DNA from: Octopus sinensis
Lineage: Eukaryota
DNA length: 64,000 bases
Direction of reading: 5' to 3'
NCBI RefSeq assembly: GCF_006345805.1
Contig: NW_021832232.1
Coordinates: 62,001 to 126,000, forward strand
Positions 1,582 through 57,982 of the stretch are shown here, piece after piece (within the stretch, counting starts at the first letter, position 1; the number at the start of each line of letters is the position of its first letter). The notes beneath the pieces were generated by a model. That model worked only from the letters and a program-made list of their open reading frames with translations, made no database searches and was not told the DNA's origin. A program made the position numbers and the translations under genes.

Positions 1582-1714
1582 GAGTAAGTGGTCTATATCA
1601 CGCATATCATAATTCGCAAAGTGTAGGATTGTTTTTCCACTAATTTTGAATATTTTAAATATTTCAACATTTAAATATTAAAATAACCAAGTCAATCGTG
1701 AGTGTTGTGGTGGT

Positions 1715-2211
1715 ATGGTGGATAGTCCAATTTATTTGACCAAAGAGCAGACCGAGGCACTCCTAAGAAACATCGAGGAGGTTCGATTCTTACTCAAATG
1801 ATACAAGGAAATACAAATCATAACCAACAGCATCGAATCTCTCAGAATGGCCGAGGAGGGATTTCTCGACTCCAACGAATGGCTGAACGATTTTTCTTCC
1901 ATGAATAAGGGGAAGGACATGATCGTCCCCCTAACCAACTGCGTTAGAACAATCCCCCATACTATTCCAGTTGTTCACCCGAGGGACATTAGAAGATACC
2001 TCTCACGTCCTTATTGATATCGGAACAGGCTATTTTGTAGAAATGGTTGAGTGTGTGGCCTCAATATTAGACTATTTCCAAGGCACAGGAACACTTTGTT
2101 CGCAAGATTAAATATATCCAGGATAAGACCACTCATCTTCGATCTGCCCTATCAGAAAAATTTAATTTGAGGTCTTCCATAATGCAGTCTCTTTCTGCCT
2201 CTCGCTCCTAA
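1715..2211 (+). CDS. PFDN5: Prefoldin subunit 5 (alpha-type), about 3 short introns
   Basis: Spliced translation EIQIITNSIESLRMAEE..MIVPLT..VLIDIGTGYFVEM..AQEHFVRKIKYIQ, ending TAA 2209-2211. The start is uncertain. Confidence 0.85.
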
Positions 2212-2382
2212 AAACTATTCTAACTCCTAATGTTTCTTATTTCATAATTTGCTGTTAAACTGAGTAAACCCACCTTTTTTCAGCACTGGATTGCCATCGA
2301 AATGTGTACTGGTCAGACATATTATCTCAAATAATGTAATGGACTAGAATAAATAAACAACAAATCCAAAATCAGAACAGTA

Positions 2383-4606
2383 CTATGAACGTTCGATCAA
2401 TCCGTGTCGGGAAGGGTCAATAAATTGGGCAATAAACACGTCTACAAACTTATCGAGGAGTCTACGGAAATTGGCCTCTTCACTCTCACTTGCATTTCTA
2501 AAATCGTCAGAGGGGACTACTTTTGTGAAGGTGGGCCAATAATCTCAATATAAAACTTGATTTTAGGCTCCGTCCCACTCGCTCGAAGAGTGGCAGTCAG
2601 CGAGTGGTCGAAATAGAATGTTATCATTTGCGATGAACTTTTGGGAATACGCTATGATGGTGCACTACAATTTACAGCTTTACGGTCGGGATATGAATTG
2701 TCGAACCCAGTGGTGAGGTCACGCACATTCTTGACTTGGAATTCACCACAAAAAGTGGGGTACTACCAAAATAGTAATAAATGGTCGTACTGTGGCAGGC
2801 CCATCATAATTGCGGAGACGGTCAAATACTCGGAGGGTAGTTTGAGGGGAGGGGGACACAAAGTAGGAATTGCGGGTGAGGTGTCTCCCATATTTCCTGT
2901 AGAGACGTTCGAGGAGAGTACTCAGGAATGGATTCTTCTGGTGAGCTGTGAGGTATCCGGTCAATTGGGCGATGAGGACTGCTGCACTGATTCCGTCCTT
3001 ATCCGGAATGTAGGGGTTGCACATATATCCAATGGCTTCCTCATAAGCAAACAGAACTGAGTTGTTTTGTCTGTTCAGTTCATTGCAGGTGTTGCCTATC
3101 CATTTGAAACCCGTCAATGTCTCCTGAGCATTCCTAACATCCCCCTACTTGGAAAATGAAGCCTTCAGCCTCGGCCATCGTCCTTATAAATTTAGAACTC
3201 ACTGCAGAGGTCACCATGCACGTCTTCTGGACTTTGGAATAACAGGAAGGAATACTGTCGCAGTACGTCAACTTTTTCCGACAAAACAGCAAAAACCATG
3301 CCAAAATACACCCAGTTTCGTTGCCCGTGAAAATCTTCCAGTTGCCACTAGAATACTCCTGTGGTACATTACTCGGCCTGTCTCTCAGCCACGGCCAAAC
3401 GGTCGGCGTCGGGGTCATTGGCCAACACAATCCTGGCCCCAATCCTCTCGGCCAACTTCATTGAAAGTTCCTACGGATTTTCAAACAGAATGGACCAAGC
3501 ATGACTCCTCCTCGGGATTGGGGCATTTGACTGTGCCAAAGTCAGGGTCGACATCGCACTGAGTAGGGCATCACCTCGTACCTGTTCTTCGACGTAGCGA
3601 AGAGTGGAAGGAATGCCGATCAAATCGAAGGCGGCTCGGATGTAGGGAGTGCCCACCCCATGCATTGCGCTGTACACTATTGGGGGGACGGACAGCCACG
3701 TATTTCTGCATATTTGTCAATTTAACTTGTAAAAATTAAGTTTGTTCAATTCGTTGAGATATCCACTCAATGCTGTACTGAGGACTGAATTGTCGTCATT
3801 TATGGAAGAGGTGTCCCACGCTGATTCGGACGGCACAGGATTTGCGGAGATCTCCTTCAAAACTTGGTCCTCGACTTCATCTGGGGCCTACCCGTGACCA
3901 GACTTGTCTACCTGTGCCCCGTATTCCCAATATAACTTGAAGCCGTTGTCTTGTTTGGGGTTGTGTGAGGCAGTGATCATCACACCACAACAACATTTCA
4001 AGTGCCGTACCCCGAAAGCCACGAGAGGAGTGGGGACACACTCACTGTACAGGAAAACAGTCACATTTGCATTTCGTAAGACATTGACCACCAGGTGAGC
4101 ATATCTACTCAGTCCGGCAATGTCGGGACCTTCTACTGTTGTGTCGACCGTCAAACCCGACCACCACCTTTCTTCGCTCTTCTTCCTTGAAGGTCGACTT
4201 GAGTATGTTTGATAGGGCCTTGCGTGTATAGTCAAGTCAACCTGAGCAATTTGGATGATAGTGAGCTCATTGAGATACCCAAACCCGCACTGCATTCTTC
4301 CTCTGATTCCTTTATGGTGAGGCAGTGCACACAACCAGCTGTTCCGAATGAGAGACTCGAAAGCATCCGATCCTTCAATATTTCGAAATGACCATTCAAC
4401 AGGAGGTCCTTTACTTGAGCAGATGATTCTTCGTTCTAACTGTATCTCCCTTATACTAACCCTGTCCCACGATAACCATTTGCTAATCGCCTCGTCGAGG
4501 GATACGTCACCAGTTGATTCGTATGTACAGTCCTACTCGTCACTTTCTTTGTAATCACCTCAGTTTGGGCAGAACATATAAACTCGGAACACCCGATTTT
4601 ACCCAT
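2383..4606 (-). CDS. PGM2: Phosphoglucomutase-2 / phosphopentomutase family, multi-exon
   Basis: Motifs [69 protein letters not shown] and DKDGISAA. Introns include 4219-4241 (23 nt). Confidence 0.93.
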
Positions 4607-6541: not shown

Positions 6542-8134
6542 TAGGGCAACCGCAAATATGACCTAAAAAATTTCAAATATGACCGATAAAATAGACTTAT
6601 ATGACCTTAAACGAAAAAAATATATGCCTTAATATGACCTAATAAATTTGTATTTTATGTACTAATATAAAGTTTTAATAAGGCTTATATTTAGAACTAG
6701 CTCAGCAGTTCGCTTCGCTCACTGCGAGCTAGCTCCTGCGGAGGGCCCTGCTCGCTACGCTCGCAGTTTCCTTAAATAACTATAAATTTATGTGATATAT
6801 AAATGCGACCTGCTTTGATATAACCTTATTCTAAGGCCTGTGGATAAACGATGTTTGCAGTCCGTCATCCTTGGCAAATATAAATAAATTTTCTTCTTCC
6901 TACCCTTGAGCACCCCACATACAGCTGGCCATGTGAAAAAGCACTCGTTCTCTAAAAATAAGCCTACTACCTTTAAAGACTGTCCTGGGCCTTGTTTATT
7001 GTCATAGCAAAACTTATCTTCAGCGGAAATTGTAGTCTCTTAAATCTATCGCAGGCCCTTTCATGGTCCATTAACGTCGACCGATTTATATATTCTTTCT
7101 CTGCCAGGGATTTTCATTAATAAATCTAAATTATATTAAAGTACCTCATCATAAGTGGAGCTAATATAGCTCGTTCACGCAGCCAGTAGAAATTCACGTA
7201 GTGTTCAGATAGTTCGGAATAGACGGCATTCATAATTCTTTTGCTGTTTCTACGAAAATACATAATTCTTCCGGTAGCCTAATTTTCTGGTCGTGCATTT
7301 CTGAAGTGATTGCCCCATTTCCAATATCTAGAAGGATTTGTGGGAATATGCTATTAACGCCTTGTAAATGTGCATGTACATTTACACCTAAGCTTACCTT
7401 TTTCACGTGTGTCCACAAATATGATGTAATCCATCTAATATGTCACTATAACATGATTTTATCAATGCAAGGTTTCTTTCCAAATTAATTGAATCTAAAG
7501 CAGTTTTTACTTTATCTAAGATTTTCCCTTTTTGTTAAATTCAGGACCAGAAACCTTTTTTGTTAAACCAATTTAAAACAAAAATAATTTGGAATTGCAA
7601 TCAATTTCGATTGACGCAAGTCGTGTGTTTTACTTTTTTTTATGCATTTCCGTCTGTCTGTGTTGTTCCACGTTAAAACTTTTTGAAAAGTTTACCGGAA
7701 CACAACAGAACTTGCAATTAAGTCCCATTAGTACTTCTCGTAAATTCGTGCGGATATTTATTTAATATTTTAGAGAGTTTGAATTCATTAGATTTTTTTG
7801 ATTTAGGCATCTATTAAATACCTTTTTTATATAAAAACCTTTATCTCACTCAACAAAAAACCGATTATATCTCACATTATAAAAAATAATTCAAATATTA
7901 TTATTCAAAATTTATATTAAAAAAAATAAATATTAATCTAATTCATAAAATATACAAAAATTTGAATATGACTTTATTTTTATAATATGACTTTATTATT
8001 GAATATGACTTATATGACCTATTAATAAGTGTTTTTAAATAGTTAAAAAATATAATTAAAATATTTAATTAATATAAACAAACACAAAATGACCTTATTT
8101 TGTGATAAGCATTATATGACTTTTGGTTGCCCTA
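6542..8134. mobile_element. Non-autonomous hAT-type element with 10-bp TIR, 8-bp TSD and subterminal repeats
   Basis: Termini TAGGGCAACC...GGTTGCCCTA. TSD CTGATTAT at 6534-6541 and 8135-8142. Several ATATGAC(C/T)T motifs near both ends. Confidence 0.85.
6697..7560 (-). mobile_element. Helitron 3' fragment (Pif1 helicase C-terminus, terminal hairpin and CTAG), nested in the hAT element
   Basis: The minus strand encodes WTHVKKVSLGVN..LLDIGNG..IRLP and FKRLQFPLKISFAMTINKAQ..FSHGQLYVGCSRVG. A GC-rich hairpin region (about 6701-6770) is followed by CTAG|T at 6700-6696. The 5' limit is approximate. Confidence 0.85.
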
Positions 8135-9500: not shown

Positions 9501-9666
9501 AAAGGTGATCAGAACGAATAATGCAAATGTGAAGCAACTTCGAGCTTGGCAATTATTGTATAAATTGTATTAACTAAATGACTGAAAGAATATACTTTTT
9601 GTAACTGAGCCAAAAGCTAAATATATATATTTATCGGCCACTCAGTTCTTGTGGTGCTGTATAGAT

Positions 9667-11550
9667 ATGGGCAAAACTTCCCGAAGGAACCCTGGGAACG
9701 AAATGCTTTCCACGGGTCTGCCCTCCTCCAGACTCCATCCAAACTCATCTGGTACCCTTAAACATAATCGTGAGTCAAACCCCGCGTGAAGACTGCCCCT
9801 GCAGTATCAATCAGGGACATGAATCGGAGTTATCAACTATTTCTAAGTAAAACAGCCAGTAATTATGCACACAAATTACATTTTATTAGACGCCGTTGCC
9901 ATTTACGAATTTCTGCGAATCCGTCACTCTTCCAGGGCACTCCCCTTCTTATAATCCCCACAGCCCATCTTCCTGACTAGAAATCTGTCATATTTCCGCA
10001 CAAAGTGGGGCACTTCGAGGAAGGGGAGACCCTTCAGTGTCGATTCCCTCCTCAAAAGCACGGTTAAAAAAACAATCAAAATCAGTCTAAAAATCGACCT
10101 GTGCAGTGTTACCCTCCCGAACTGTCAGTCCCTTCCTCTCATTCGCAGTTTCGACGGGGACTGTCATCTTCTCAGTGACAGTGGTGGGGGGACAAGTCTC
10201 GGACTATTCTGTATTCCTGTCTAGTCAATGGCAGGTATTGCTCAAATGTGAGACAATTGTCCAAAAGAAGGTCAAAGTTAAGCTGTGGAGGGGGAAAGTA
10301 GAGAACCCGTTGGAGACAGGGGTGAGTATATCATTCGACTGTGATGTGGCCCGTCTCAAACCGTCGAGTATTCTGTTTCAGCTTATTACTGGTTTGTCAT
10401 TTGGATGACGAATTATAGACGTGGATATGTATTACTGCATTCTCCCCTTTTATAACAATTCATTCATCAACCAGTTCTCTTCCGGGGAATACCAGGCTAG
10501 ACTGATTAGTGTGAACGACTCTGTTTGGCTGGATTGTCTATTTTTAGAATTCTTTGCACTCCTCTCCACTTATTGCCTTCTCTGTTGACAAATGGACTGA
10601 CAACCCTCCTGCGAACTGTGATCTGAAAAGTGTTGTTTGTGCGAATTGATTCAGGGGGATTATCCGCTCGGTCAATCACCAGTCGGAATGTGGTGTTCGA
10701 GTTTGTATTCAAAGACAAACATCGACAGCGATTTTGTTCGAGGTCTGACTGGGTCTGTCCATTCTGCCACGTCAATTGTCGGAGTCTGAATTGTCTGATG
10801 ACTCATCTACGCCACTCACACGCCCGTCTCACCTTCAATTCAGTGGTTGTCATATTTGTCCAATTTGTCAAGGGGGGTGTGAACACAATCATCCAAATTG
10901 GACTCGACGACTTGTTCGACGGCTCCTACGAAGGGAACTCATTTCGACTGCATTTCAGTCAACTCGAAGGGACCTTTCCCACCAAGCCACTCTACCGAGT
11001 GCCCATGATGATGATGTTGGTCGTCAATAAGTAGATTTGTGTGCTTATTTTTGGGTCGAGGTGGCGGAAGCCTCTTCTATGGGAAGCTCAGACCCCCCAG
11101 TTTGTGTTGTCCTGAATATTCCAGTGCGGTGTATCACCCAATGACTAATCAGCCACTCACTATCAGACAGGCCGGTCAGGATAACTCGTGGTTTACTTGG
11201 GTCGATTTGATGATGAAAAATGTATTTCACTTTTCACTATTTTAGTTGATGGACGACTTTTGCGATGTCAACGAGGGGGAGAAGGAGATCATGAAACTGT
11301 GGAACTCGTTTCTGTCCTCCAACACAGTGTTGTTGATTCTACTCGTAATCCGCCTAGTTGTCTGGGGGACTGTCATGTGGTTCCCGCCTGTCTTGAGTTT
11401 GTGGAGCAAAATAAAAAGGTGTTGGTGGACAACATGCTATGTCACAACTTTCTACTTCATTTAGTAAATTTGCACCACTTTGGAATTATCGAAACGTGTG
11501 ATATTATGCATATATGGCACTCGCTTGTATTATATATTACTTCCACATAA
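9667..11550 (+). CDS. SUZ12: Polycomb protein Su(z)12 (PRC2 core subunit)
   Basis: IYEFLRIRHSSR|PIFLTRNLSYF, a C2H2 finger CPFCHVNCRSLNCLMTHLRHSH, FDGSYEGN, and the VEFS box DDFCDVNEGEKEIMKLWN..LCHNFLLHLVNLHHFGII. Confidence 0.92.
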
Positions 11551-15298: not shown

Positions 15299-17940
15299 AT
15301 GGTTTAATTTCGTGAGCCACATTTTCTAGGACATTCGAAACTATTTTTCAAAGAGCAAAGACACAAATTCCTCAGTATTCATTTATAACCATTCTTTTAG
15401 AAACATGAAATAAAAAAAGCTCAAGTAAAATCTGAATCTCCACATTCAATTGGTCTCCTATTTTATCTAACAATCAGCAATTCAAAAACCTAGAAAACGT
15501 CCTTCGAACAGAATTTTAAGCAGTGACGACTCAGAACATTCCAGAACGATTCCTAATATTATAGATAGCCCAATCCAGAACAAAGTTACAAGAAAACGCA
15601 CAAAAAAACCCACCGAACTCAAAAAATCGGAAGAACCTCCCCAATCGACAAACATAGACACAAAAACTGCACAACCTGTTTCAAAACGGCAAAATTTCCG
15701 AATGCTGATGGAACGTGAGCCGCCTACCCAACTGGGGTCAAAAGTGCTTCCTGAGGTGTTAAATTGGTGGTGAGTGAGCAGGCGGCAGAGAATTGTCTGG
15801 AGGGACTGACCTTCGTCCTGAGTGGAGTGTTCGAGTCCTTCACAAGGGAAGACATGGAGATGAGCATTCGGCGATATGGGGGACGAATCACTGCCGCAGT
15901 CAGTCGAAAGACTGATTATTTACTCCACGGACGGGACTGTGGGCAGTCTAAGCTGACCAAAGTGTCCATCGTGTTCCAATTTCCAGGCTAAAGAGTGTGG
16001 AACGACAAAAATAGAGGAGGACGAGTACATTGCCATTCTCAAATCCAAACCTTCCAATAAAAAAGTGTGTTATTGAGGGGAGTGTGTAGACTGTTGAGGA
16101 AACGAGGCCTTTGAGGGAACAGGCACTTGTCCGACGTGATTCGACTGTTTGTCACGACTTGTTGGTCGACAAATACCGTCCTCGCACATTGAGGGATATT
16201 ATTGGTCAGCAGGGGGCCAATTCTGCTGCCAATAAACTTCATCGATGGCTTACCAACTGGAGAAATAGTTTAGAAGGGACTGCGGGGGTCGAAGGGGGTA
16301 ATTTCCGGGCTGCACTTCTGTCTGGTCCTCCAGGCGTGGGGAAGACAACGACCGCCCAGGTGGTCTGCAAGGTGATGATGTGGCCATATTGTTAGGAGGC
16401 AGGGATGAGTTACATTGAAATGAATGCCTCCGATTGTCGGTCTAAAAAAAGGGTTGAAGGCCTTTTGAGGGTGTTTCTGAGCTCGCAATCACTCGCGGAC
16501 TCGTTTTCTGGGACGGCAGTTGATAAATGTCTGATTATGGACGAGGTGGATGGAATGGCTGGAAATGAGGACCGAGGAGGCATATCGGTGTGGTGTGGTT
16601 ACTAACTTGTAGGAACTCATTGCTTGTATTAAAACAACGTCTAATCCCATAATATGTATTTGTAATAACCGGTCTGACCAGAAAATGCGATCATTGCGTA
16701 ATCACTGCTTTGATTTGATTTTCCCACATCCCCGAGTGGAGCAAATTAAGGTTGTTTTCATCCCCATTTGGATTAGGCTGGAGTGAGCAGAATATTGACC
16801 AACGAGGGAATTCGAGTGCCATCGCTGGACCCCCTCATCGAGTCATCCAATCGAGATATCCGCCAAGTAATGCTCACATTTGAGTAGATTATCAACACTA
16901 TTTCTCTCTGGAGTTGTCAAAGTGGGATGACGTGGGATCAACTGCTCGCAAAATCGAAGGCGGGTGGCAAGGATATTAAGATTGTTGTCATTTTCTAATA
17001 TTTTGAGGAAGTTTTTGAAGCTTGCAGACGCGCTTTTTCTCAGAATTTTATTATGGGCAAGTCAATGAACGACCGACTTGCAAACTTTTTTGTGGACTAC
17101 TCCCTCATGCCCCTCTTCATGTTCGAGAATTATGTTGGTTTGACAGTCCAAAAGGGGTCGCATTGTAATTTATTTTCAGTGACAATCTCAGTCGGTTTGC
17201 GGAGGCGGCTGATGCCTTTTGTGTGGCGGATACATTGGATGCACAGATCAGAGGTCCCAACCCTTCCTGGGAGTTGCTCCCTCACATGGCACTCTTCCTG
17301 TGTATTTATCTCAGGGTTTTTGGTCGACGGTGGTGCCTCCGTTGGAAGTGAGAGGTTCGTTGAGCAGTCGTCTCGACTTTCCGAGTTGGTTCGGTAGATA
17401 TTCGACGAGGAATAAAAACCGTCGTTTATTGGAGGAATTGTATGCCCATTCCAAAACAAGGTTGTGACCTGAATATAGTCAGGGTTCTAAACGAGTCCGT
17501 GGATGTCATGTTGATGTATCGGCTGACTTGCCTGAAGAGCATCATTGCCTGCAAACTGAGCAACAATTCCAAAAACGAGGGGATTAGGAAAGTGGGGGAC
17601 CTCCTCAACTACTACTACCTTCAGAAAGAGGACATGGAAACTATATTTGCGTTGTGTGATTTTGGCAAGTCCAGTCTGAGCAATATTCCGTCGAATGTGC
17701 TTTTGTTTTTAATACGGCAAGGTCAAATCTGCCTTGACTCGGCTGAGGAAGAAGGATAACGTGCGGATGCCATACTCTCTGGTGAGTTCACTCCGTGCAA
17801 AGAGACGAAAGCGTGTTGTGGGGAGTGATGATGAGTTGGAGGTATCTTCTGAAAGTAGTTTTGATGTCGTCCCGCTCATTAAGACCAAGGCACTCAATAT
17901 TCATTATGCTTAGGCTAAAAACAAACGGGTAAAAAAGTGA
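15299..17940 (+). CDS. RFC1: Replication factor C subunit 1
   Basis: M|DIRNYF N-terminus, BRCT domain (CLEGLTFVLSG..YGGRITAAVSRKTDYL), LLVDKYRP, Walker A GPPGVGKTT, IEMNASD and MDEVDGMAGNEDRGG. Confidence 0.95.
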
Positions 17941-20110: not shown

Positions 20111-20898
20111 TGTCTTAAATAATAGTTTTAATTTTTATAACCGAATTGGGTCGCCAGGAAATAAAAAATTTATAATTAATAAAAAAATTTAATCAAAAAA
20201 TTTTTTAATGAATAAAATAGCAAAAATCGAGCTCCAACGTGGGTAGAAATACATCACGGAGACGTCTCGTCGTCACTGCTGGCGAGTCCCATTTGAATGA
20301 CGTCATCGTCTTTTATTCCAAAAAAGAGATTCTGGTGAATACAAAACTAGCACCATTTCGATGTGTTCGTCCTCGGAATTGTCGACCTCGAGAGATACAT
20401 TCGTCGAATTCTCCAGTTCCTTGTTGGCTTCGATTAGTTTCGGTAAAAAGTTTTTGATTTTTTTGAGCACTGTGATAATAATATAATAATATGCCTTCTG
20501 ATTCCCCGACTTTATGACCTTTATTCAGGAGGGAGTGAACTAAAATGACTATTGTTTGAAACCTCGCTTATATGCCTGCAATTTTTCAGTGTTTTTAGGA
20601 GTCTTTCCCACCATAAAATTAAGTCCACAAGAAAATTGCGACACAAAAAATATATTTTTAATTATTATTCACAATACGTTTTAATAAACAATTTATATAA
20701 AAAAAACTATTTTAATGATTCTACTAAACTAATTAATTAATGAGTTACCCATAGTCCATTCGTTACCGTGCAGATTCAATCCCATTTAATTATAAAAGTG
20801 TTTTTAAGTGCTTTTGATTATATTATTTTTTACATAATTCAAACTTTAATTGTTAATAAATAAATTTATTTAATTTAAACTGGTCTTGTTGGTTTGTA

Positions 20899-22060
20899 AT
20901 GATTTACAACCAAATGACTTTCAAAGGTACTAGTTGTGGACATTTTCAGACGGGGATACAACCGTGATCGCGAATGGTGGCTACAACGACTCAATAAGCG
21001 AGTACATATCCATTCGTGATATGACCTTCATCGGCAGTGGTAAATTCGGTCGTGTTTTCCGTGCCAAAATAAACACCTGTGACACCACCGTGGCCATAAA
21101 ACGAGTAGTTCAACGCCACGTCCATAAAGTACCATTTCCCTTCATTTCCAGAACCCCGAACTACGAATAATGCGGCAGCTTCAGCACGTGAATATAGTCA
21201 CCTTGTTGTATTACTTTTATTTGGTGGATTCGGACTTTGAGGTAGTCCCCTGCCTTATTCCAGTCCAATGACTTGATCCTCCACTTGGTCCTCGAATACC
21301 TCCCTCAGACAGTAGCCAATGTAATCCATTTCTACAGTCAGGAAGGCATAGAAATGCCCCAAATATTCATTAAAGTACTCTTTCACCCATATTCTGCAGT
21401 TGTATGTATATCAGTTGTTGTTGGCGTTGAGTTATGTCCATTCCTTGGGGATTGTCCACAGGGATATCAAGCCAAAGAACTTGTTGGTCAATCATGAGAC
21501 AGGAGTACTCAAATTGTGCGACTTTGGCAAGTTGTCGATTAGTTGAGAGTTGTAGTTCCAAAAAACTGGTAGAAGAAGGGTTGAATGTGTCCTACGTGTG
21601 TTCGAGGTTTTATCGGGCACCCGAATTGGTGTTGGGGGCCAAGAAGTACGGGCACAGTATTGATATGTGGTCGGCGGGGTGTGTCATTGGGGAGTTCTAT
21701 GCGGGCACTCCCATCTTCCGAGGAAAGAACTTTATGGACCAGTTTATTCAGATTGTGAGAGTTATGGGGAGTCCTACCAAAGAGGAGTTGGATGCTATGA
21801 ATGATCAGGCTGTTCTTAGGGAATTTCCCCGGGTGGACAAAGTACTGTGGGAGGATGTACTTTGGTGGATTTATTCTTAGTATTTGACTGATCTACCACC
21901 CTTGGGTGTACATCTGATGGATCGGATTATGAATTATACTCCCAAATTGCGCATCTCTGCTCGCGATGCCTGTTTTCATGACTTCTTTGCTGAGCTTTTT
22001 CAACCTGGAACAACTCTCCCGAGTGGCGACAGTCTCCCTACCTTGCTTCGTCCTACATAA
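20899..22060 (+). CDS. GSK3: Glycogen synthase kinase-3 family kinase (divergent)
   Basis: [49 protein letters not shown] and DMWSAGCV. Introns are 22-25 nt. The C-terminus may extend by one exon. Confidence 0.9.
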
Positions 22061-36022: not shown

Positions 36023-37847
36023 TTATTCTCTACAAACATACTCCAAAATATCTCCCAGGCGATCAGAACAGACATTTTCGGATATCATCTCAGCAGCGAC
36101 TATCTTAAGATTGTATCCCATTCTTGTCCTGCACACATAGTACATGTAATCTTGACACAAATAATGAAAAAGTTGGAAATTCCACAAAACCGACGACCGA
36201 AGAATAACCAGTTCTCGAACCACCAAAGCCCTATAAATCAGACCATCAAAACTTACAAAAACAAAGACCAACATGAAATCAAAGTTCGATAACTATTTTC
36301 ATCAGGAAACCGAACGAAAATATCAATGACGTCCAAAACCCATTTTTGCCATTCAGTCAAATTCATAAAAAGTTTAACTCCCGCGAAAAAATGATCTTGA
36401 ATTGAGACAAGAACCTCTTCCTCGCACCTTAACGACCATTTCATTTGAGTCTATGAATCAACAGAAAAATAGACTCGAATATGATCAAAATCTATCGCAG
36501 CAATCTCTTTAATCATAATTTCGTTTTCTCCACCACAGTCGCCTATTTTTTGTACGTTTTTTGACAGAATTTTCAAGGATAGTCGTACTTTATAAAAATT
36601 CACAAAGGAGGACGCAACACTGCACTATTTTGTAAACGGCACACCCGATACTACTTTAATGGTCATAAGGAGAGGACTGGAGAGACACATCAACACGGAC
36701 TTTGTTTGTTCCTTGACTTGTTGAGAAAAAGTGTGGTACCCATCAAACAATCCTTAAATATTATCTATCAATTACCGGATGCAAGGTCGTCGGGGATGAA
36801 CGAATCGAGCAAATGTTGGAAGAACAGACAATCAGTCTGGAATATAAATGAAAGAATAAATTTTCTTTTAATCAGGGAATTCAAATCAGTTTTTTGCAGT
36901 CTGTGCATTAAAAACAAATAAAAACTTTGCCTCTCCCAGCGAGAATTCCCCATTCCAAAAAAGCCTCCAAACTTCAAAAACAGCAGGAAACTGACGGTTG
37001 ATAAAATGTTCATAACTTTTCTATAACACATCAAACCAAAAAACAACAGCCAAGTGATTTTTGTATAAGGATACAAAGACAAACGCATCCTCCGAGCAAA
37101 AAGGTGGCACAGTGAAGGGAATATTTGGAAATCGAGCCAAATGTGAACACGGAGAATTTAAAGACGCCTCTTTTAACTTCACAGACTCGTTTTCCCGAAT
37201 ATCCAATCCCATAGAAGAGACCTTTTGTCGAATTCCGTAGTAGTGGTATTTGGAATTACCTCTGAAAACTAAAAAATCAAGGCCAACCGAGTCCCCAGTC
37301 TCCTTGTCGAAATTGGAGAAAAAGTGTTTCTTACGAGTTTCCCAAAAGATGCTTGGTTCATTGCGGTTTCTCCCCGCATGTTGCAGTAATTCATATACAT
37401 AATATAAATAGTGCTCCGAGCAATGGAAGCCCCCTCGGAATATTCAAACTTTTCGGTGAGCCATTTAGACTAGAAATTGTAAAATCCATAATAACCGTTT
37501 CTTTGAAATTGGGATTGATTTCTTGGGAGTTGTCGGACTGTTTTGGAGTGTTGTTGACAGGGAAGTCTGGAATGAATACATTCTTAAGAAAATAAAATTA
37601 AAATCGTACGGGAGCGGAGAATATATATTTAATGTCCGTTGGTTGGTGTTGTGGTTCGTATTCTGGAAAATTATTTCTAAATGTCTATGAGAGTTATAAA
37701 TACGTCCAGTCATTAATTTCTGTGGGATTATAATTTTGAGTAATTTGTGAGGGAATGCAGTAAGGCTCATATCGAGAACGAGAAGGCGGCTCGTGATTTA
37801 GAGAATTAGTTTACCCTGTATTTATGATTATATGGCTGATTAGTCAT
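36023..37847 (-). CDS. RFX: RFX transcription factor (RFX1/2/3, daf-19 type)
   Basis: The DNA-binding domain, not shown in the ORF track, reads KWLTEKFEYSEGASIARSTIY..MNQASFGKLVRNTF..TRRLGTR|GNSKYHYYGIR. The C-terminal dimerisation region reads WNFQLFHYLCQDYMYY. Confidence 0.9.
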
Positions 37848-37896: not shown

Positions 37897-38019
37897 ACAG
37901 ATAAAGTATTTGAATTACAAAAATTATATTTTCATATATACTAAATATTGAATAAATAATTTAATAATTATTACGATTATTGCAATATCTGTCCTAACCG
38001 GTATCCCGTGAGGGTGGAG

Positions 38020-44808: not shown

Positions 44809-46130
44809 TTAGAAGATATCTGGACACATGGACCAATCCTGTTTTGCCTTGGCAGTCCAATACCCGCCGATATATCGATACATTGAAAGTCCAGTCCACT
44901 CATCTGTCATCAATTTAAACCAAAGTGGACAATGTGTGTTCAAAGCTGCTAAATGCCAGAAAAGACTTACAATGATTGTTTCTCTTATCTCGTTGCTTTT
45001 GTTCAAGACTCAGTTTAATCTGACTGGCCAAATCCCAGTTTCCTTCCTCCATACTTCGCTGATCTGGCCTCAGTCGAGAGTCCGTCGGGGCCACTCCATT
45101 TTCGTGGGCGTTCAACTGCAAAGCAAAACGACCAAAACGGTATTTATTCTCATTTTCCGGCCTAACACTAACCAACAGTCACTCACGGATATCCGACAGC
45201 ACTCCACAAATCAACAAACACTCCATTCCCCTGCTCCACCCTCAAATAACTGTCCCACTCCCCCTTTAGACGCATCTGCACCACTCCACTGGCATCTTTA
45301 ATATCTCCCGTCACCTACCAATCAAAAACACACAAAATGACCAGTCGGGTTATTCGGGTAGAAAAATAACTGGAGGCATGGAAGGTCAGTTTGCATGAAT
45401 GTCCAGTCGTGTGATTCACCACGGTCAATTCCCCGTGATTATCAACCCACATTTTCCCCACAATAATATTATTCACGTTGATTGGCAGTCTTTTCCACGA
45501 ATATGAATTGCCGCTCATCCGAAAGTGGACAACCGAATGACCTGCCATGAACAACACAAACAACCAAGGGGGATCATCCTCAAATACTTGCCTCTAAATT
45601 TATTGGAGACAGTCATTTCATGGTAGTACAGCCACTCGGCTGACTGGGTGTGTTGGGCCATGGTTGGGGGGTGGTGGGAGACTTGTTCGGCAATTGTCCT
45701 CCACCCAAGATCAGCCAGACGGTCGAATTCGTAGGTCTCGGAAAGAAGGGGGTTGAATGGTTTGTAGAAACGGTGTTTGGTGGTGGAGTAGGAGGAGACC
45801 ACAAAAGCACACAAATTGGCCATTTCCATTACGGGATCAGTCGGAAATGAGGCAGCCTTGTCCAGAAGGTGGCTATATTCTAACAGTTCTGTTATTCGCT
45901 GGAGGAGGGATATTGGCTCGTTGAAGTTTATTGGGAAGGGAATTTTGGTGAGGTCCAATTCGATGAATTTTGAGATTATTGGCCACAGTTTGACCGACAT
46001 TTCCAGTCGATCAGGAATTGTGGACCTCCATTTTCTATTTTCAGTGGCCGGTTTTTCGTTGTAGAAAGAAATACCGTCATCACTGGAAGTAAGTTGAGAT
46101 ATGATACCCAGTCTTTAATTGACAGTCCAT
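44809..46130 (-). CDS. OSBP: Oxysterol-binding protein, ORD only
   Basis: DLTKIPFPINFNEPISLLQRITE, KPFNPLLSETYE, EQVSHHPP, IIVGKMWVDNHGE, PTDSRLRPDQR and GGYW..W..CPDIF*. Confidence 0.92.
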
Positions 46131-46462
46131 GTCTTTAGCTACCTGCGACATTTACTCAACAATAAAATTTTGGTCACAGGAAATAAAACTTTGGAAATAC
46201 ATTTTTGTACTATTTTTAATTTATTTTTTATATCAAAAATATTAATTAATTATTTTTAAAATATAATAGGTTCCTCCTGTACAGCGGAGTAAAGACGCCT
46301 GTGCTTGTTTTGTTCATTCTGTATTTTGACCTGAATTAAAAAATTGTCTTTATCCTTATCTATTATTCCATCTTTTTAATTGATTTTAATATTTTCAAAA
46401 TAATTTTGAGCAATATTACAATTTAGTAATTAAATAAAATAATAAACAATCTCTGTTTCGTG

Positions 46463-47266
46463 ATGCCTGGTGGTTCCGACGTGACACAAAACAGTGAAGA
46501 AGTTGAAATAAGCGTAGAAGAACTCGTCAGACGACTTTACATCGTAAAACTATATTGACCAATAAGCAACAAGTAAAAAGGCTTTCCAGAATGAGAAGTT
46601 AGCGCCTGAATTGTTGCCACACAACGAGGAACTTGTCGCAGCCCTGATCTCCCAAATAACCCTTATTGACCAGAATATAAAATCTGTAAGAACACGTGAC
46701 CTACGAGTGAGTCTTCACCAACTGGAGGCAATCCCCACCCAATAATATCGTAGAATGAGCGCCTCAAGTATTTGGTGTCGTCATATCTGCGTTGTCGCCT
46801 CAAAAAAGTATTAATATGGCTGAGAGTGCAGATCGAGGACTGCATGGAACACTACCAACAACTCGGCAACTACCATGTGCTGTCTTCCTACGAATTGGAC
46901 TTTCTGAAAGGGTAGTGTTTGTGTGGAGGGCAGTTTCAACGACTTGATAAAGGGGTATATTCGGTATCATGGACTGGCCCACTTGCCGATAAACATGCGG
47001 CACTTTAAGGAATGTGAGAAGGGTGGTGAGTAGTCCTGACTGTGCAGAGTCCAATTTCCCTAAGCCGTATTTGCACAGATTTGTGTATATTCGGTGTTTG
47101 GAGAATATGGGGCAGGTGGTGTTGGGAGATCAGACAACTGGGAGGTGTGGTGTGTGCTCTTATTATCAGGAATAATATCGTCAATCTTAGTAAGGACGAC
47201 CAGTTCATTATTCGTTATGACCTCATCAGAGATCTTGTCCTATCCAACCGTGTTGAACTTATTTGA
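46463..47266 (+). CDS. GINS4: GINS complex subunit 4 (SLD5)
   Basis: FQNEKLAPELLP, LHQLE|NERLKYLVSSYLRCRLKK|IE, FVYIR and a C-terminal IIRYDLIRDLVLSNRVELI*. Confidence 0.88.
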
Positions 47267-50529: not shown

Positions 50530-50830
50530 TCGTTGAAGTGGAAAAAATATCTTATGAGAATTTTGGTTCCAACTTCTTTCTCTTTGGTATCGATCCGCCT
50601 CCTTCCGCCAGATTCATGGGCCGGAATACAACGTCTGTATCCTTGACAGGTTCCTCTGGTGTTTCGTGGTGACTGCTGCCTTCACTTAGTCGTTCATTGA
50701 TTGCATGATTCACTGTTGTAGGTAAGAGTTCGTACTCCGGGCGCATGCTCTCCAGTGTTATTTTGATCACGATTTTTCAAACATATTCACACATTGAGTC
50801 ATGGACTTGTAGGGAGTTTTGGTATTGCTT
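50530..50830 (-). mobile_element. 3' fragment of the R4/Dong-like family seen at 38640-40400
   Basis: Clear nucleotide similarity to 38700-38940, e.g. GATCCGCCTCCTT, ACAGGTTCCTCTG and CACTTAGTCGTTCATTGATTG. Confidence 0.8.
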
Positions 50831-54121: not shown

Positions 54122-55260
54122 TAATGGAATTCAGGGGAGCATTGCTAAATGACAATATCATATTATCAAAAGCTAAAATGATTGTGGAAATGGAGGCATT
54201 ATCTAGTTTTAGAGCAAGTGAGGTTGTTTTATTTTTCGTTTCATTTGAAGGCTGGTTAGAAAATTTTAAACAACAGAATGGTCTAAAATTTAGAAAATTG
54301 CAAGTGAAATTTCATCATTCAATGAACTCAATGAAAAATTTATTAATGATTTCTTTTTATGTTGAAAGATAAATTCTTAAAATACGGAATTGAAAATGTA
54401 TAAAACGCTGATGAAATGTATACAAATTCCTTCAAAAAGTGTATACAAAGCCAAAAAATGTTAACGGATCGGTTACGCGCTAATTCAGACGGATCCGGCA
54501 AAAAGTGTCACTAATGATCGGGAAATACCAAAACCCAGATGTTTCAAAGAAAATAATATTGAAAATTATCTCACATACACAAATTCAAATAGAGCCTGGA
54601 TGGATACAAAAGTTTTTAGTCAGTGGCTAATGAAATGAAAACTCAAATTAGATAAGAAAAATAAAACATTTTGTTAGTTATTGATCGTTGCCCGTCACAT
54701 AAAATAACATTAAGAGAGTTGAAGTTTTATTTTTACCCGCGGGATCAACTTTACTTTTGCAGCCACTAAACCAAGAAATCATTAAATGTTTTAAAAGCAC
54801 TTTTAACAACATAAAGTTCAATTACATCATTGACAAAATTGAAGCTGGCGTCGACTCTTTTAGTGCATATAAGTCTGTTATATTAATTGATTCAATATTT
54901 TTCATGGAAAAATGTAGAACCAAAATGTTGAATGTTTTAAGCATGCAAAATGGATTCCAAACTAAATAGATTGCCCAACTATAATTTCAAACAAAATAGA
55001 ACACTTGGATACTCTTATACAAAAATTACAAATAAACGACCCATTGCTGAAAAAGACGAATTAATAAAAATGTCTCAACATGATGCATCTGAAAATTTCG
55101 AAACAGTTCCTCGCGATAAGGTTATTAAGAAAATTTAATTGAGACCAACAAAAATGAAAATGTGGATATTGTAAACTCTTTCGGTCAGGAAACAAAAATA
55201 GCGGATTCGAGAGAGGTTATTGTATATTTATTGCGAGTCTCTTATTTGAAGACTGAGCCA
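54122..55260 (+). mobile_element. Tigger/pogo (CENP-B, DDE_1) transposase remnant
   Basis: GWLENFKQQNGLKFRKL, NSNRAWMDTKVF, VIDRCPSH, FLPAGST and LQPLNQEIIKCFK, with multiple stops. Confidence 0.8.
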
Positions 55261-55308
55261 GTAAGATAAAAAACAGATATTGGAATGCGCGTATGATAAA
55301 CAAAAGTG

Positions 55309-57982
55309 TCATTTTGTGAAATAAAAATTGTTAAAATCGAGTCGAAAACCAAGGAATTTGAGGTCATCGGTATCATTCGTCAAAAGCGAACACAAAAAAA
55401 ACTTAACTTTCTCCTACCAATGACCAGAAGGCAACGCAACCTTGAATGTAAGGGAATACACGTCAAATCTGGACTTATAATCCGCCACGTGAATGCTAAA
55501 CCTTCTCGCGTCAAAACCACATTCGCCCGTCTGCCCGAATAATAAAATCCCCAACCTTTTCACATCGGGAATACTCACCAAATGCCTCGGCAATAAGCAA
55601 GTTTAAATGGTGCTCAAACTGGACTACAATGTCGAATATACTTCTCAGTTCTCCCAACAACTCCTACAATCGGGACAACCAGGCACACCAGGGAAGAATC
55701 GTCAATGAAGGATCCAACCAGGATGGTCTTCAGAAACACATTATGAGCAGCTGCCAAGTCATTCAAGTCAACAACAGTCTCCAAACTCTGAAGAAAGGCA
55801 TCCCAAGCACATTCCAAGACCTGCGAATTAGTGATTCCAACCCACCTCAAAGTTAAGATAATACTGAATCTGTGCCACAAATTGAATCATACTGGAGAGA
55901 AGAGTGAAACACACGTGCAGAACAGGTCTCAACTCTAACCCATCCCTCATCACTAAATCAACCCACAAGTTTCCTCAAACGACGGGAATTGTGGATTAGA
56001 CTGAGCCAGGCTGCAGACAGAGTATACTCCAGTCGTTTGGACCTCCACAGAAAGTTAAAAGCACGCAAATACATCAGCATTGCGTCATGTCCTATCACCT
56101 ACACCTCAGCACACATCAATCAACAGTGTTCAGAGCCAGAGGGAGCTCATAGTTTAGGGTAAAGACATCCCAGCCGACCTCATCATTGGCCAGCTGAAGA
56201 AGTCGAACAGAAAGTCTCTCAATTACACAATCGGACTCATATTGGGCACTTGTACTCCTGATTGCTGAGTCGAGAATTGAATTGAGTGTGTGTCTTTGCT
56301 GGAGACTGGCAGACTTGCTCAGTTCAGGTCTAAACCTTACCAATCACAAAACAACTCCAGCAAATCCATCAAATGCCGAACAAAGTCCCCTTGTGAGAGC
56401 AGCAGGTATCGGCGGATCGCACTTATGTGTTCCACAAAGCGATGAATCCTCGAAAAGGCCTTCAAAACGTGGCTATTCGCCATTTTGTGTATTTTGAACA
56501 GTCGTAGTTCAAATTCCTCGTTGTCTGAGCACATAAAATAGCCTGATTGCAATAATATTGTGATTGTACCGTCTGAGAATAATTTGGAGGTGAGTTGAAT
56601 GAATTGTGAGGACTTGACCAACGTGGGGTCCTCGATGTAGCCCAGAAATGCGACACAACGACCAATCGACAAAATCTAGGCTAGTTCAGTCCACTTTACC
56701 ATTTCTGCTTGTTTAATGCTCAGAAAAGTCGGAATCATTGACTTGCGAATTATATATTTGCATGTCCAAATCTCGTGGTCCCCGACTCCGGGATTCAACG
56801 ACACAAAAAACTATAAAAGCAAAAGGAGAGCACAAACCTCTAAATAAGGGTCGTGAATGACACCAGATTGCACGAAAGTAAGAATGAAGCGCATCAGTGG
56901 TTCCAAAGTCAGTCTAAGCAATCTCTCCACCAACTCCCGAATGAAGGGATCACCACTACACGACCAATATTGGTAGATGTGGGATATCAGTTCTCCCCCC
57001 TTCTTGTCTAGTGGAGTCAGACACACTCCCCACCCAGACAACTCTCACTGATCATTCCCAGTGCTTTCAATGTCTTTTTCATATCGTAGAAGGACACCTC
57101 AATTCGAGTCAAACTCAGACTTTGTGTGACATTCTTTTGTGATATTTGTTGGTTTATATGTGAGGCCATGGTCGACACAAGTCCATAATAATCCACAAGC
57201 TCTTGTTTGAGGGAGTATTGGAATGCCTACTCAACTAAGCCAGTCAAATAACCTTCATAACTAAGTATGGAGTGCCTGATTCCTCTCGATTGCCCGACAT
57301 TGCCTCCACTTTGCCAAACAGCCAGCCAATTTCCCTCAGTCGGGAGGCCCGGTCTGCCAATGGCTGGGACAACTACACCTAATTTAACCCAAATTCCTTC
57401 TCTGCAGGGCTGTACCCCAAATCAATGTCCTGGATTAGGTTTAAGGCGTCGCTGATTACGAAATCTTGTTCCTGTCTGTACTTTTCGACCACTAAATGAT
57501 CATTTCCACACAACTGCTAGTTTTTGGAACAATTTGTCGTCCGACCGGGAGAATTCTGTTTCCCGAGACAGAATTTTGAGAGTTTTGGAGGAAAGTGTGT
57601 GTTTGTGGGAAGGGAGACCACATTTTTTGACAAAGTGGTAAATAAAGGCGACAAATCTTCCCGAATCATTCCTCGATTGGCGAATTCGTCTCAATAGTTC
57701 AAAGAGTCGAGTGATTTGGCGTCCTGGCCCATTTTGTTTCCTTAAAAGGTCAACAATTCTCATTTCGTCGACTCTTTCAAAATCAGAATTGCGATTTCTA
57801 TATATATAAAGGAATTTAATGAATTGTGACTGATATAATGTATGCTTACTGCATGAGATGGCCAAGGCTGAATTTTATAAGGCTCTGTTCTGATCCTAAA
57901 AGCGTTGTTAACTAAAATAAAGACCATCATGTTGTTTGACAATTTTTTTGCATAGGGATTTACAAAGTTGTTCAAATTCCAT
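55309..57982 (-). CDS. TUBGCP3: Gamma-tubulin complex component 3
   Basis: YWSCSGDPFIRELV, RRYLLLSQGDFVRHLMDLL, VGWDVFTLNY, QVLECAWDAF and FLGFRLDFNNFY*. Confidence 0.92.

What the first reader, a model, noticed from the sequence alone, without database searches (positions are those of the whole stretch)
1700..57700. Recurrent C-rich to G-rich strand-skew flips inside GC-rich gene islands, independent of gene orientation
Seen: in GSK3, SLD5, OSBP (minus strand), Su(z)12, RFC1 and PFDN5/PGM2 the + strand goes from C-rich to G-rich over a few hundred bases, sometimes cycling at roughly 1 kb. Introns carry the skew too. GSK3 intron 21129-21151 has 8 C and 2 G, while 21531-21555 has 1 C and 9 G. 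SLD5 intron 46728-46753 has 9 C and 3 G, while 46912-46933 has 1 C and 11 G. OSBP is C-rich at 45180-45300 and G-rich at 45660-45800. It is therefore not a codon effect. Known: a C-to-G skew switch is the signature of bidirectional replication origins and of strand-asymmetric mutation. Inference: fixed intragenic origins, or a localised ssDNA mutational process, mark these housekeeping islands. AT-rich genes (anoctamin, LRRCC1, MAGUK) do not obviously show it.
Basis: partly seen in the sequence, partly recalled or inferred. Interest (0 to 1): 0.75.

Follow-up and report, generated by a model that had tools for sequence, protein, structure and literature searches.

The report
Gene-polar G/C skew, not replication origins
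A few compact genes in this dicyemid-like animal DNA switch from C-rich to G-rich on their coding strand about 500 bases after the start codon, at silent sites and in introns too. This matches a 5'-to-3' gene skew already described in yeasts and does not look like replication origins.

Summary
I found 7 C-to-G and 7 G-to-C flips at |z|>=3.5, against 0.7 of each expected. Only three genes carry the flip at neutral sites: GSK3, OSBP and SLD5. There it appears at synonymous positions (shuffle z=4.6, 4.6, 2.95) and in introns (Fisher p<0.001). In RFC1 and the LRRCC1-like gene the skew follows amino-acid composition. There is no ~1 kb periodicity.

"Independent of gene orientation" is automatic, because a C-rich-to-G-rich step reads the same on both strands. 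In sense terms GSK3, OSBP and SLD5 all run from a C-rich 5' part to a G-rich 3' part, flipping 430-585 nt after the ATG.

Replication origins do not fit:
- The blocks are only 350-900 bp long.
- Some opposite flips lie 400-550 bp away.
- Skew correlation is gone by about 400 bp.
- At four-fold and intron sites G and C swap while T:A stays unchanged.

The closest known pattern is the opposite 5'/3' GC skew of genes in unicellular fungi (McLean & Tirosh 2011). It is most likely linked to transcription, but its cause is unresolved. A break-resection model predicts the same geometry and cannot be excluded within 64 kb. Interest is modest.

The parts
20896..21994 (+). GSK3 gene model (7 exons, introns of 22-25 nt). 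The coding strand is C-rich over 20950-21398 and G-rich over 21399-21886.
   Evidence: Pkinase match E=8e-56 covering profile positions 4-263 of 263. HMM G-rich domain 21399-21886. Neutral-site change-point 21396, support 21388-21414, pG 0.32->0.67. Synonymous shuffle z=4.64. Intron G/C 7/23 versus 11/3.
21399..21399 (.). C->G flip inside GSK3, about +500 nt from the start of the model. The return G->C flip is at 21932.
   Evidence: z=5.2 and z=-4.45 in the 400-bp flip scan.
44827..46151 (-). OSBP-family gene model (6 exons). On the + strand 45028-45637 is C-rich and 45638-45982 is G-rich, so the sense strand runs from a C-rich 5' part to a G-rich 3' part.
   Evidence: Oxysterol_BP match E=1e-113 covering profile positions 2-367 of 368. 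HMM domains. Flip z=6.44 at 45566. Synonymous shuffle z=4.63. Four-fold G:C odds 0.25, p=0.0028, with T:A odds 1.30, p=0.65. Intron split p=0.00047.
46463..47266 (+). SLD5/GINS4-like gene (6 exons, hand-completed, including a GC-AG intron at 46728-46753). A G-rich block at 46892-47543 runs past the stop codon.
   Evidence: The translation is open from ATG to stop. p3 excursion z=2.95, p=0.005. HMM domain. Change-point 46892, support 46865-46921.
15317..16613 (+). RFC1 5' region. A C-rich block (15317-15732) is followed by a G-rich block (15734-16613). This is mostly an amino-acid composition effect.
   Evidence: HMM domains. Flip z=5.29 at 15731. The synonymous shuffle is not significant, z=-0.13. 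The N-terminus is a K/P/S/T/Q-rich low-complexity sequence. RFC1, AAA and BRCT Pfam matches.
2392..4532 (-). PGM2-like gene, the counter-example. The + strand is G-rich over 2585-2985, so the sense strand is C-rich in the 3' part.
   Evidence: PGM_PMM I-III matches. Flips at 2585 (z=4.11) and 2985 (z=-4.6). Exon 2791-3123 has p3 G/C of 18/43.
36038..37567 (-). Unnamed 9-exon gene with a 5'->3' rise in sense G at third positions. The + strand is G-rich over 37508-37911 at its 5' end.
   Evidence: p3 r=+0.20, p=0.008. Flips at 37508 and 37911.
10157..11436 (+). SUZ12 gene (partial model). A C->G flip at 10153 follows a C-rich 9600-10000 stretch.
   Evidence: VEFS-Box and Zn_SUZ12 matches. Flip z=4.02. 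Synonymous shuffle p=0.03.
55456..57357 (-). Gamma-tubulin complex component gene. The sense strand is G-rich throughout and there is no neutral-site flip.
   Evidence: GCP_N and GCP_C terminal matches. Synonymous shuffle z=0.67.

Best explanation
The flips are the mid-gene crossover of a gene-polar G/C asymmetry. On the coding strand, the first ~0.4-0.6 kb of a transcription unit is C-biased and the rest is G-biased. This is the pattern described for unicellular fungi.

A C-then-G step is reverse-complement symmetric, so every such gene looks like an origin-type C->G switch on the + strand whichever way it points. G->C switches then fall at or near gene ends.

Shown here: in three genes the asymmetry reaches synonymous sites and 22-27 nt introns. 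It is a G<->C exchange with A and T unchanged. It is diffuse, not carried by a motif.

Inferred, not shown: it is laid down by something tied to transcription that differs between the early and late phases of RNA polymerase II. I think the most likely cause is a strand-asymmetric mutation or repair regime. Selection on the G/C content of the nascent RNA or non-template strand, for example R-loop propensity, is the alternative.

In RFC1 and the LRRCC1-like gene, the skew blocks are ordinary amino-acid composition effects layered on top.
For: Polarity and position:
- In sense orientation GSK3, OSBP and SLD5 all go from C-rich to G-rich. The flips lie at +500, +515 to +585 and +430 nt from the ATG.
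- Pooled sense GC skew over 19 gene models rises: -0.04 (upstream 300), +0.01 (first 300), +0.08 (middle), +0.11 (last 300).
- 15 of 19 genes have last300 > first300, Wilcoxon p=0.014.
- The pooled third-position slope is r=0.051, p=0.006. No gene has a significant negative slope.

Neutral sites:
- Synonymous shuffles and the intron split at exon-derived change-points.
- At four-fold and intron sites only G and C change.
- The G-rich block of SLD5 continues 280 bp past the stop codon.

Published match:
- McLean & Tirosh 2011 (PMC3315797) report the same features: a C-biased 5' end, a G-biased 3' end, presence at four-fold sites, extension into UTRs, near-flat A/T, and 'many but not all genes' (33% significant in C. 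albicans).
Against: - At neutral sites the general trend depends on two genes. The Mantel-Haenszel test (first 500 nt versus the rest) gives OR 0.85, p=0.032 with GSK3 and OSBP, and OR 1.09, p=0.34 without them.
- PGM2 has the opposite polarity.
- MAGUK, the gene at 58 kb and calreticulin drift the other way, though not significantly.
- The non-coding flanks (down300 minus up300) show no significant difference, p=0.47.
- Several of my gene models lack confirmed 5' ends.
- No expression or transcription-start data were available.
- 64 kb holds only about 20 genes.
Confidence: 0.5

Rival explanations
1. Footprints of DNA breaks. Recurrent double-strand breaks, meiotic or otherwise, form in the AT-rich nucleosome-free gaps between genes. 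Resection exposes the 3' tails for a few hundred bases on each side. Damage to that single strand, bypassed as C->G, makes the left flank G-rich and the right flank C-rich. The mid-gene C->G flip is then where tracts from two neighbouring break sites meet.
For: - Block lengths of 345-880 bp are in the range of resection tracts (yeast and mouse values from my own knowledge).
- A pure G<->C exchange without a T/A shift fits abasic-site bypass better than deamination.
- The effect is patchy among equally GC3-rich genes, as hotspots would be.
- Aggregated over 42 intergenic AT valleys, neutral-site skew is higher on the left than on the right: GC skew difference 0.054, p=0.034.
- 9 of 12 GC-rich islands have a positive left-to-right G slope, Wilcoxon p=0.034.
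- It can accommodate the intragenic G->C flip in PGM2 at 2985.
Against: - Its geometry is the same as the gene-polar model wherever one gene fills one island, so most of the evidence above does not discriminate.
- The valley-centred aggregate is weak.
- There is no AT valley at the 3' end of GSK3.
- No recombination data were available.
Confidence: 0.15
2. There is no common mechanism. The flips are a mix of protein-driven composition (low-complexity and coiled-coil regions, domain-specific amino-acid usage), transposon fragments read in antisense, and a few locus-specific quirks of codon and intron composition.
For: - RFC1 15317-15732 and the LRRCC1-like block 42682-43432 are explained by amino-acid composition. 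Their synonymous tests give z=-0.13 and -0.68.
- The + strand G-rich block 29979-31037 lies over ORFs of unconfirmed, possibly retroelement, origin on the - strand.
- 11 of 16 genes show no significant synonymous clustering.
- Intron G/C content is over-dispersed in its own right: chi2 205.6 on 107 df.
Against: - Three genes at p<=0.005 out of 16 tested is far more than chance, and all three share the same polarity and flip distance.
- Introns and four-fold sites switch together at a change-point fixed from exons alone.
- The remaining 13 genes still show mild over-dispersion. Stouffer Z is about 2.1, my arithmetic from the z values.
Confidence: 0.2
3. Fixed bidirectional replication origins sit inside the genes.
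For: The sign of the switch (C-rich then G-rich on the + strand) is the one seen at origins.
Against: - Blocks are 0.35-1.06 kb long, and some opposite flips lie 400-550 bp away.
- Autocorrelation is gone by about 400 bp.
- There is no replicon-scale trend in cumulative skew.
- There is no T-over-A co-skew at four-fold or intron sites.
- C->G and G->C flips are equally frequent, 7 and 7.
- The orientation argument offered for origins is a reverse-complement identity.
Confidence: 0.03
4. Selection on mRNA folding. A G-poor 5' half and a C-poor 3' half would keep the message unstructured, or would let the two halves pair.
For: The polarity is the same in the three genes.
Against: - The minimum free energy of the spliced CDS equals that of synonymous-codon shuffles: GSK3 z=0.45, OSBP z=0.18.
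- Introns, which are removed from the message, carry the skew.
Confidence: 0.03

Closest known systems
[quoted passage not shown]
   Same: The coding strand is C-biased at the 5' end and G-biased towards the 3' end. The pattern is seen at four-fold sites and runs beyond the CDS. A and T are nearly unaffected. Amino-acid usage follows it (OSBP second positions). It is strong in a minority of genes only.
   Different: This is an animal-type genome, dicyemid-like, with 22-30 nt introns. Here the introns can be shown to carry the skew. The switch is step-like, about 0.5 kb after the ATG, and not a gradient. The window-wide average is weak and one gene (PGM2) is reversed.
C-bias of the sense strand around transcription start sites in plants and fungi (Fujimori et al. 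2005, BMC Genomics 6:26; PMC555766)
   Same: There is an excess of sense-strand C at the start of transcription units.
   Different: That peak is described around the TSS. Here the C-rich block covers about 500 nt of coding sequence, and no TSS data exist.
Replication-associated skew jumps (bacterial origins; human skew N-domains; from my own knowledge)
   Same: The + strand steps from C-rich to G-rich.
   Different: Replication skews persist over the whole replichore or tens to hundreds of kb and pair G with T excess. Here the blocks are under 1.1 kb, are bounded within a few hundred bp to about 1 kb, and have no T/A component at neutral sites.
GC skew and R-loops at mammalian CpG-island promoters and 3' ends (Ginno et al. 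2012, 2013; from my own knowledge)
   Same: Strand G/C asymmetry is tied to the ends of transcription units. G-rich 3' parts occur in gene-dense DNA.
   Different: In mammals the non-template strand is G-rich just downstream of the TSS. Here it is C-rich. No G-quadruplex motifs are present and G-runs occur at the level expected from composition.
Transcription-associated mutational asymmetry in mammals (Green et al. 2003; Polak & Arndt 2008; from my own knowledge)
   Same: Introns here are G+T-rich on the sense strand overall (T 958, A 577, G 402, C 298).
   Different: That asymmetry has one sign along the gene and involves transitions (T/A changes). The flip here reverses sign within the gene and leaves T:A unchanged.

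Membership tests
Gene-polar opposite 5'/3' GC skew (fungal type) | The coding strand is relatively C-biased at the 5' end of genes. | tested here: met
   GSK3, OSBP, SLD5 and the gene at 36-37.5 kb have sense C-rich 5' blocks at neutral sites; RFC1 also has one, but it reflects amino-acid composition. Pooled sense skew is -0.04 upstream and +0.01 in the first 300 nt, against +0.08 to +0.11 later. PGM2 is an exception.
Gene-polar opposite 5'/3' GC skew (fungal type) | The coding strand is G-biased towards the 3' end. | tested here: met
   Pooled skew in the last 300 nt is +0.107. 15 of 19 genes have last300 > first300, Wilcoxon p=0.014.
Gene-polar opposite 5'/3' GC skew (fungal type) | Present at four-fold degenerate or other unconstrained sites. 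| tested here: inconclusive
   Met in GSK3 (four-fold p=0.031, introns p=0.00086) and OSBP (p=0.0028 and 0.00047). SLD5 has p3 p=0.005. The pooled neutral-site test is not significant without GSK3 and OSBP: OR 1.09, p=0.34.
Gene-polar opposite 5'/3' GC skew (fungal type) | Extends into promoters or 5' UTRs and into 3' UTRs. | tested here: inconclusive
   The SLD5 G-rich block runs to 47543 (stop codon ends at 47266). The RFC1 C-rich block starts at 15317, before the ORF. Pooled down300 minus up300 is not significant, p=0.47.
Gene-polar opposite 5'/3' GC skew (fungal type) | [quoted passage not shown] | tested here: met
   T:A odds between halves are 1.10 and 1.30 at four-fold sites and 0.90 and 0.33 in introns, all non-significant. 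Intron T/A is 30/13 versus 18/7 in GSK3.
Gene-polar opposite 5'/3' GC skew (fungal type) | A consistent genome-wide average over all genes. | not testable with these tools
   Only 64 kb (about 20 genes) is held. The GSK3 protein search found nothing closer than 59% identity, so no further sequence of this organism could be fetched.
Replication-origin skew switch | Step from C-rich to G-rich on the reference strand. | tested here: met
   7 such steps at z>=3.5. There are also 7 steps of the opposite sign.
Replication-origin skew switch | The skew of each arm persists to the terminus, at replicon scale. | tested here: not met
   Domains are 345-1059 bp. Autocorrelation is zero beyond about 400 bp. 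Some reverse flips lie 400-550 bp away.
Replication-origin skew switch | G excess is accompanied by T excess at neutral sites (keto skew). | tested here: not met
   There is no T:A shift at four-fold or intron sites. The T:A shift at all third positions is the forced C/T and A/G choice at two-fold codons.
Replication-origin skew switch | Initiation of DNA synthesis at the switch. | not testable with these tools
   This needs OK-seq, SNS-seq or 2D gels.
R-loop-type promoter GC skew (mammalian CpG islands) | The non-template strand is G-rich immediately downstream of the start. | tested here: not met
   The sense strand is C-rich in the first ~500 nt of GSK3, OSBP and SLD5. There are no G4 motifs in the 64 kb.
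Break-resection strand-coordinated mutation | A G-rich-to-C-rich switch centred on a break hotspot, with arms of resection-tract length. | tested here: inconclusive
   The aggregate over 42 AT valleys gives a left-minus-right GC skew of 0.054, p=0.034. The geometry is the same as the gene-polar model. Hotspot positions are unknown.

The most novel reading that the evidence does not exclude
In this ultra-short-intron animal genome, ~0.5-kb blocks of pure G<->C strand asymmetry, with a step-like boundary 430-585 nt after the ATG, may record a discrete molecular transition in the sequence itself. That transition would be either the early-to-late change of state of elongating RNA polymerase II, or the limit of resection tracts from break hotspots in the gene gaps. 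If so, the boundary could be mapped from sequence alone. It would also be the first report of the fungal-type opposite 5'/3' skew in Metazoa, with introns proving that it is not translational.
Probability: 0.2. Interest if true: 0.55.

Novelty: new member of a known kind. Interest (0 to 1): 0.3.

Why it matters
If the pattern holds genome-wide, a dicyemid-type genome would be a clean system for an old open question: why do the two ends of a gene carry opposite G/C strand bias? Its 22-30 nt introns are frequent neutral probes inside every gene, so translation and protein constraints can be excluded directly. That is harder to do in intron-poor yeasts.

In practice the result is also a caution. 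Small-scale C->G switches in compact eukaryotic genomes should not be read as replication origins. 'Orientation independence' of such a switch is a mathematical identity, not evidence.

Tried and rejected
- Greedy ORF chaining with a 75-nt minimum exon mis-spliced GSK3. I replaced it with a self-trained Viterbi exon/intron model and validated it with Pfam.
- A protein search with the GSK3 exons found no relative above 59% identity and no copy of the window's own protein. No orthologous DNA or further sequence of the organism could be obtained, so substitutions could not be polarised.
- Periodicity of ~1 kb is rejected by the autocorrelation.
- Motif-driven skew (G-quadruplexes, G-runs) is rejected. 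There are 0 canonical G4 motifs, and runs occur at the level expected from composition.
- Cytosine deamination (G+T versus A+C skew) looked plausible from all third positions. It disappears at four-fold and intron sites.
- mRNA folding gives no difference from synonymous shuffles. A first, larger run timed out.
- Repeat copies as a mutation-spectrum probe were too few to use. Only one 474-bp pair at 91% and one 232-bp pair at 81% exist.
- The valley-centred (break hotspot) aggregate is weak, p=0.034, and not separable from the gene-polar model.
- A universal 5'->3' gradient at neutral sites is not supported once GSK3 and OSBP are removed.
- I considered and dropped antisense ORFs or overlapping genes as a cause. 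Antisense open frames are no longer than usual for GC-rich coding DNA.


Full report
**What the window is**

The 64 kb is 36.6% G+C. GC-rich stretches of 44-50% alternate with AT-rich gaps. Genes are interrupted by GT..YAG introns of 22-30 nt. I built exon/intron models with a self-trained Viterbi decoder and checked them against Pfam.

| Gene | Strand | Coordinates |
|---|---|---|
| PGM2-like | - | 2392-4532 |
| SUZ12 | + | 10157-11436 |
| Inositol polyphosphate kinase (IPK) | + | 13547-14459 |
| RFC1 | + | 15525-17910 |
| Calreticulin family | - | 19056-19949 |
| GSK3 | + | 20896-21994 |
| cNMP-binding (PKA-R-like) | + | 26921-28089 |
| OSBP family | - | 44827-46151 |
| Gamma-tubulin complex component (GCP) | - | 55456-57357 |

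- The GSK3 kinase profile is covered 4-263 of 263 and the OSBP profile 2-367 of 368. The splicing of those two models is therefore essentially right.
- SLD5 (+, 46463-47266) was completed by hand and reads open from ATG to stop.
- Composition and intron size match the published Dicyema japonicum genome: 36.7% GC (PMC6736024), with median introns under 30 bp known only in dicyemids and myxobolids (PMC13644364). The source is probably a dicyemid.
- A protein search found nothing closer than 59% identity to GSK3. No further sequence of this organism could be brought in.

Yes, as far as the raw counts go.
- Against a null that shuffles G/C labels over the same G+C landscape, a 3-state HMM finds 8 skewed domains where 0.02 are expected.
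- A two-sided 400-bp scan finds 7 C->G and 7 G->C flips at |z|>=3.5, where 0.7 of each are expected.
- The variance of G-C in 100-bp bins is 63.8 against 36.5.

Two parts of the description fail.
- There is no ~1 kb cycling. Autocorrelation is positive to 300-400 bp and then flat. Significant C->G flips are 5.6-10.4 kb apart.
- The flips are not all the same kind of thing.

I kept each protein fixed and shuffled synonymous codons among positions coding the same amino acid. Clustering of G- versus C-ending codons along the gene was then scored.

| Result | Genes |
|---|---|
| Significant | GSK3 (z=4.64, p=0.0005), OSBP (z=4.63, p<0.0005), SLD5 (z=2.95, p=0.005) |
| Marginal | SUZ12 (p=0.03), the gene at 58 kb (p=0.04) |
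| Absent | RFC1, GCP, PGM2, calreticulin, PKA-R, anoctamin, MAGUK and the LRRCC1-like gene |

- In GSK3 and OSBP the switch is seen at third positions (G:C odds 0.26 and 0.27, p about 1e-5) and at four-fold sites (p=0.031 and 0.0028).
- It is also seen in introns. When the change-point is fitted on exon bases only (21402 and 45638), intron-interior G/C is 7/23 versus 11/3 and 6/24 versus 6/0 on the + strand. Fisher p is 0.00086 and 0.00047.
- So in these three genes the skew is regional and not a codon or protein effect.
- By contrast, the RFC1 C-rich block (15317-15732) encodes a K/P/S/T/Q-rich low-complexity N-terminus.
- The LRRCC1-like G-rich block (42682-43432) is a purine-rich coiled coil.
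- The block at 29979-31037 lies over ORFs on the opposite strand that were not confirmed as a retroelement.
- Across all 108 introns, intron skew tracks the third-position skew of flanking exons only weakly (rho=0.20, p=0.04). It does not track at all once the three genes are removed (rho=0.07).

**The orientation argument**

A sequence that is C-rich and then G-rich has a reverse complement that is also C-rich and then G-rich. Finding the same + strand step in + and - strand genes is therefore guaranteed and says nothing about independence from transcription.
- Restated on the sense strand, GSK3 (+), OSBP (-) and SLD5 (+) all have a C-rich 5' part and a G-rich 3' part.
- The step falls at about +500, +515 to +585 and +430 nt from the ATG.
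- Over 19 gene models the pooled sense GC skew rises: -0.04 (300 nt upstream), +0.01 (first 300 nt), +0.08 (middle), +0.11 (last 300 nt).
- 15 of 19 genes have last300 > first300, Wilcoxon p=0.014.
- Third positions show a small pooled slope (r=0.051, p=0.006), and no gene is significantly negative.

The caveats are real.
- At neutral sites the pooled test loses significance without GSK3 and OSBP.
- PGM2 has the opposite polarity.
- My 5' ends are unconfirmed for several genes.

**What kind of change is it?**

- At all third positions both G/C and T/A shift. That looks like a G+T versus A+C skew.
- At four-fold sites and inside introns, T:A does not move. Odds are 1.10, 1.30, 0.90 and 0.33, all non-significant. 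Intron T/A is 30/13 versus 18/7 in GSK3.
- The third-position T/A shift is therefore the forced C-or-T and A-or-G choice at two-fold codons. The primary variable is G versus C.
- That is not the signature of cytosine deamination on exposed single strands.
- The skew is diffuse. There is no canonical G-quadruplex motif in the 64 kb, and G- and C-runs occur at the level expected from composition.
- Predicted mRNA stability equals that of synonymous shuffles, z=0.45 and 0.18.

**Replication origins**

The sign of the step fits. Nothing else does.
- Arms are 0.35-1.06 kb long.
- Some opposite steps lie 400-550 bp away: 21399/21932, 2585/2985 and 37508/37911.
- Correlation is gone by about 400 bp.
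- There is no replicon-scale trend in cumulative skew.
- There is no T excess with G at neutral sites.

I put this reading at about 3%.

**Best explanation**

The pattern matches what McLean & Tirosh (2011, PMC3315797) described in almost all unicellular fungi.
- The coding strand is C-biased at the 5' end and G-biased at the 3' end.
- The bias is visible at four-fold sites and into UTRs.
- A and T are nearly flat.
- Amino-acid usage is dragged along. Here OSBP second positions give G:C odds 0.25, p=8e-5.
- It is significant in many but not all genes (33% in C. albicans). Here 3 of 16 genes are significant by the shuffle test.
- Fujimori et al. (2005, PMC555766) described the related C-bias at transcription starts in plants and fungi.

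I therefore read the flips as the mid-gene crossover of a transcription-unit-polar G/C asymmetry (confidence 0.5). That the cause is tied to transcription phase is inference. Whether it is a mutation/repair bias or selection on the nascent RNA or non-template strand is unresolved, both here and in the literature.

**The serious rival**

Breaks in the AT-rich gaps between genes, with resection-limited, strand-coordinated C->G change, predict a G->C switch at each gap. They also predict a C->G crossover where neighbouring tracts meet.
- This is the same geometry as the gene-polar model.
- It fits the block lengths, the pure G<->C character, the patchiness among genes and the intragenic G->C flip of PGM2.
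- Support from the window is weak. The valley-centred aggregate gives p=0.034, and 9 of 12 islands have positive slopes.
- I give it 0.15.
- A 'no common mechanism' reading gets 0.2.

**Novelty and interest**

- The kind of pattern is known.
- Neither the D. japonicum genome paper nor the 2026 ultra-short-intron paper mentions skew: 0 occurrences in each.
- This would be a new member of a known kind, seen in an animal lineage.
- Its useful extra is that introns every ~150-200 bp act as built-in neutral probes.
- The evidence rests on three genes in one 64-kb window. I score interest at 0.3.

Noticed in passing
window 46728-46753: The second SLD5 intron has a non-canonical GC-AG boundary (GCAATCCCC...CGTAG, 26 nt). 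Using it keeps the conserved '...VSLHQLE|NERLKYLVSSYLRCRL' reading frame. The only GT donor upstream would give an atypical 47-nt intron and delete conserved residues.
   Followed up: partly
all 108 modelled introns, e.g. 16065-16089 (G/C 10/0) versus 21129-21151 (0/7): Intron G-versus-C content is strongly over-dispersed: chi2 205.6 on 107 df. There are 15 very G-rich and 5 very C-rich introns where 5 and 0.9 are expected. The 22-30 nt introns seem to come in GU-rich and CU-rich flavours, mostly unrelated to flanking exon skew.
   Followed up: partly
window 1142-1581 versus 25691-26163; also 38705-38935 versus 50580-50811: There is an inverted 474-bp repeat at 91% identity and a direct 232-bp repeat at 81%. 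The first pair lies in ORFs carrying a 'PVGL.RGDGKRP' motif. The motif recurs at 29138-29572, and other ORFs resembling reverse-transcriptase or endonuclease genes lie at 131-927, 22.3-24 kb and 29.9-30.7 kb. These are probably LINE-type retroelement debris. No Pfam hit was obtained for the 24750-25961 ORF.
   Followed up: partly
window ~7800-8000: An extreme AT trough: 9% G+C in a 201-bp window centred at 7976 and 12-14% in 200-bp bins. It is the lowest in the window.
   Followed up: no
window 55456-57357 and 10157-11436: The large - strand gene at 55-57 kb is a gamma-tubulin complex component (GCP_N and GCP_C). SUZ12 (VEFS-box plus SUZ12 zinc domain) is the + strand gene at 10.2-11.4 kb. Genes not named in the finding are an inositol polyphosphate kinase (13547-14459), a calreticulin-family gene (19056-19949) and a two-domain cNMP-binding PKA-R-like gene (26921-28089).
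   Followed up: yes
whole window: G+C of 36.6% and the intron length mode of 24-27 nt match the published Dicyema japonicum assembly (36.7% GC). The window is probably from a dicyemid. No protein closer than 59% identity exists in the searched protein collection.
   Followed up: partly
window 41000-43600: The LRRCC1-like gene has a very strong A-over-T excess on the sense strand (TA skew down to -0.54). Its third-position+intron T-versus-A slope is negative (r=-0.15, p<0.001), opposite in sign to most other genes. It is a purine-rich coiled-coil gene.
   Followed up: no
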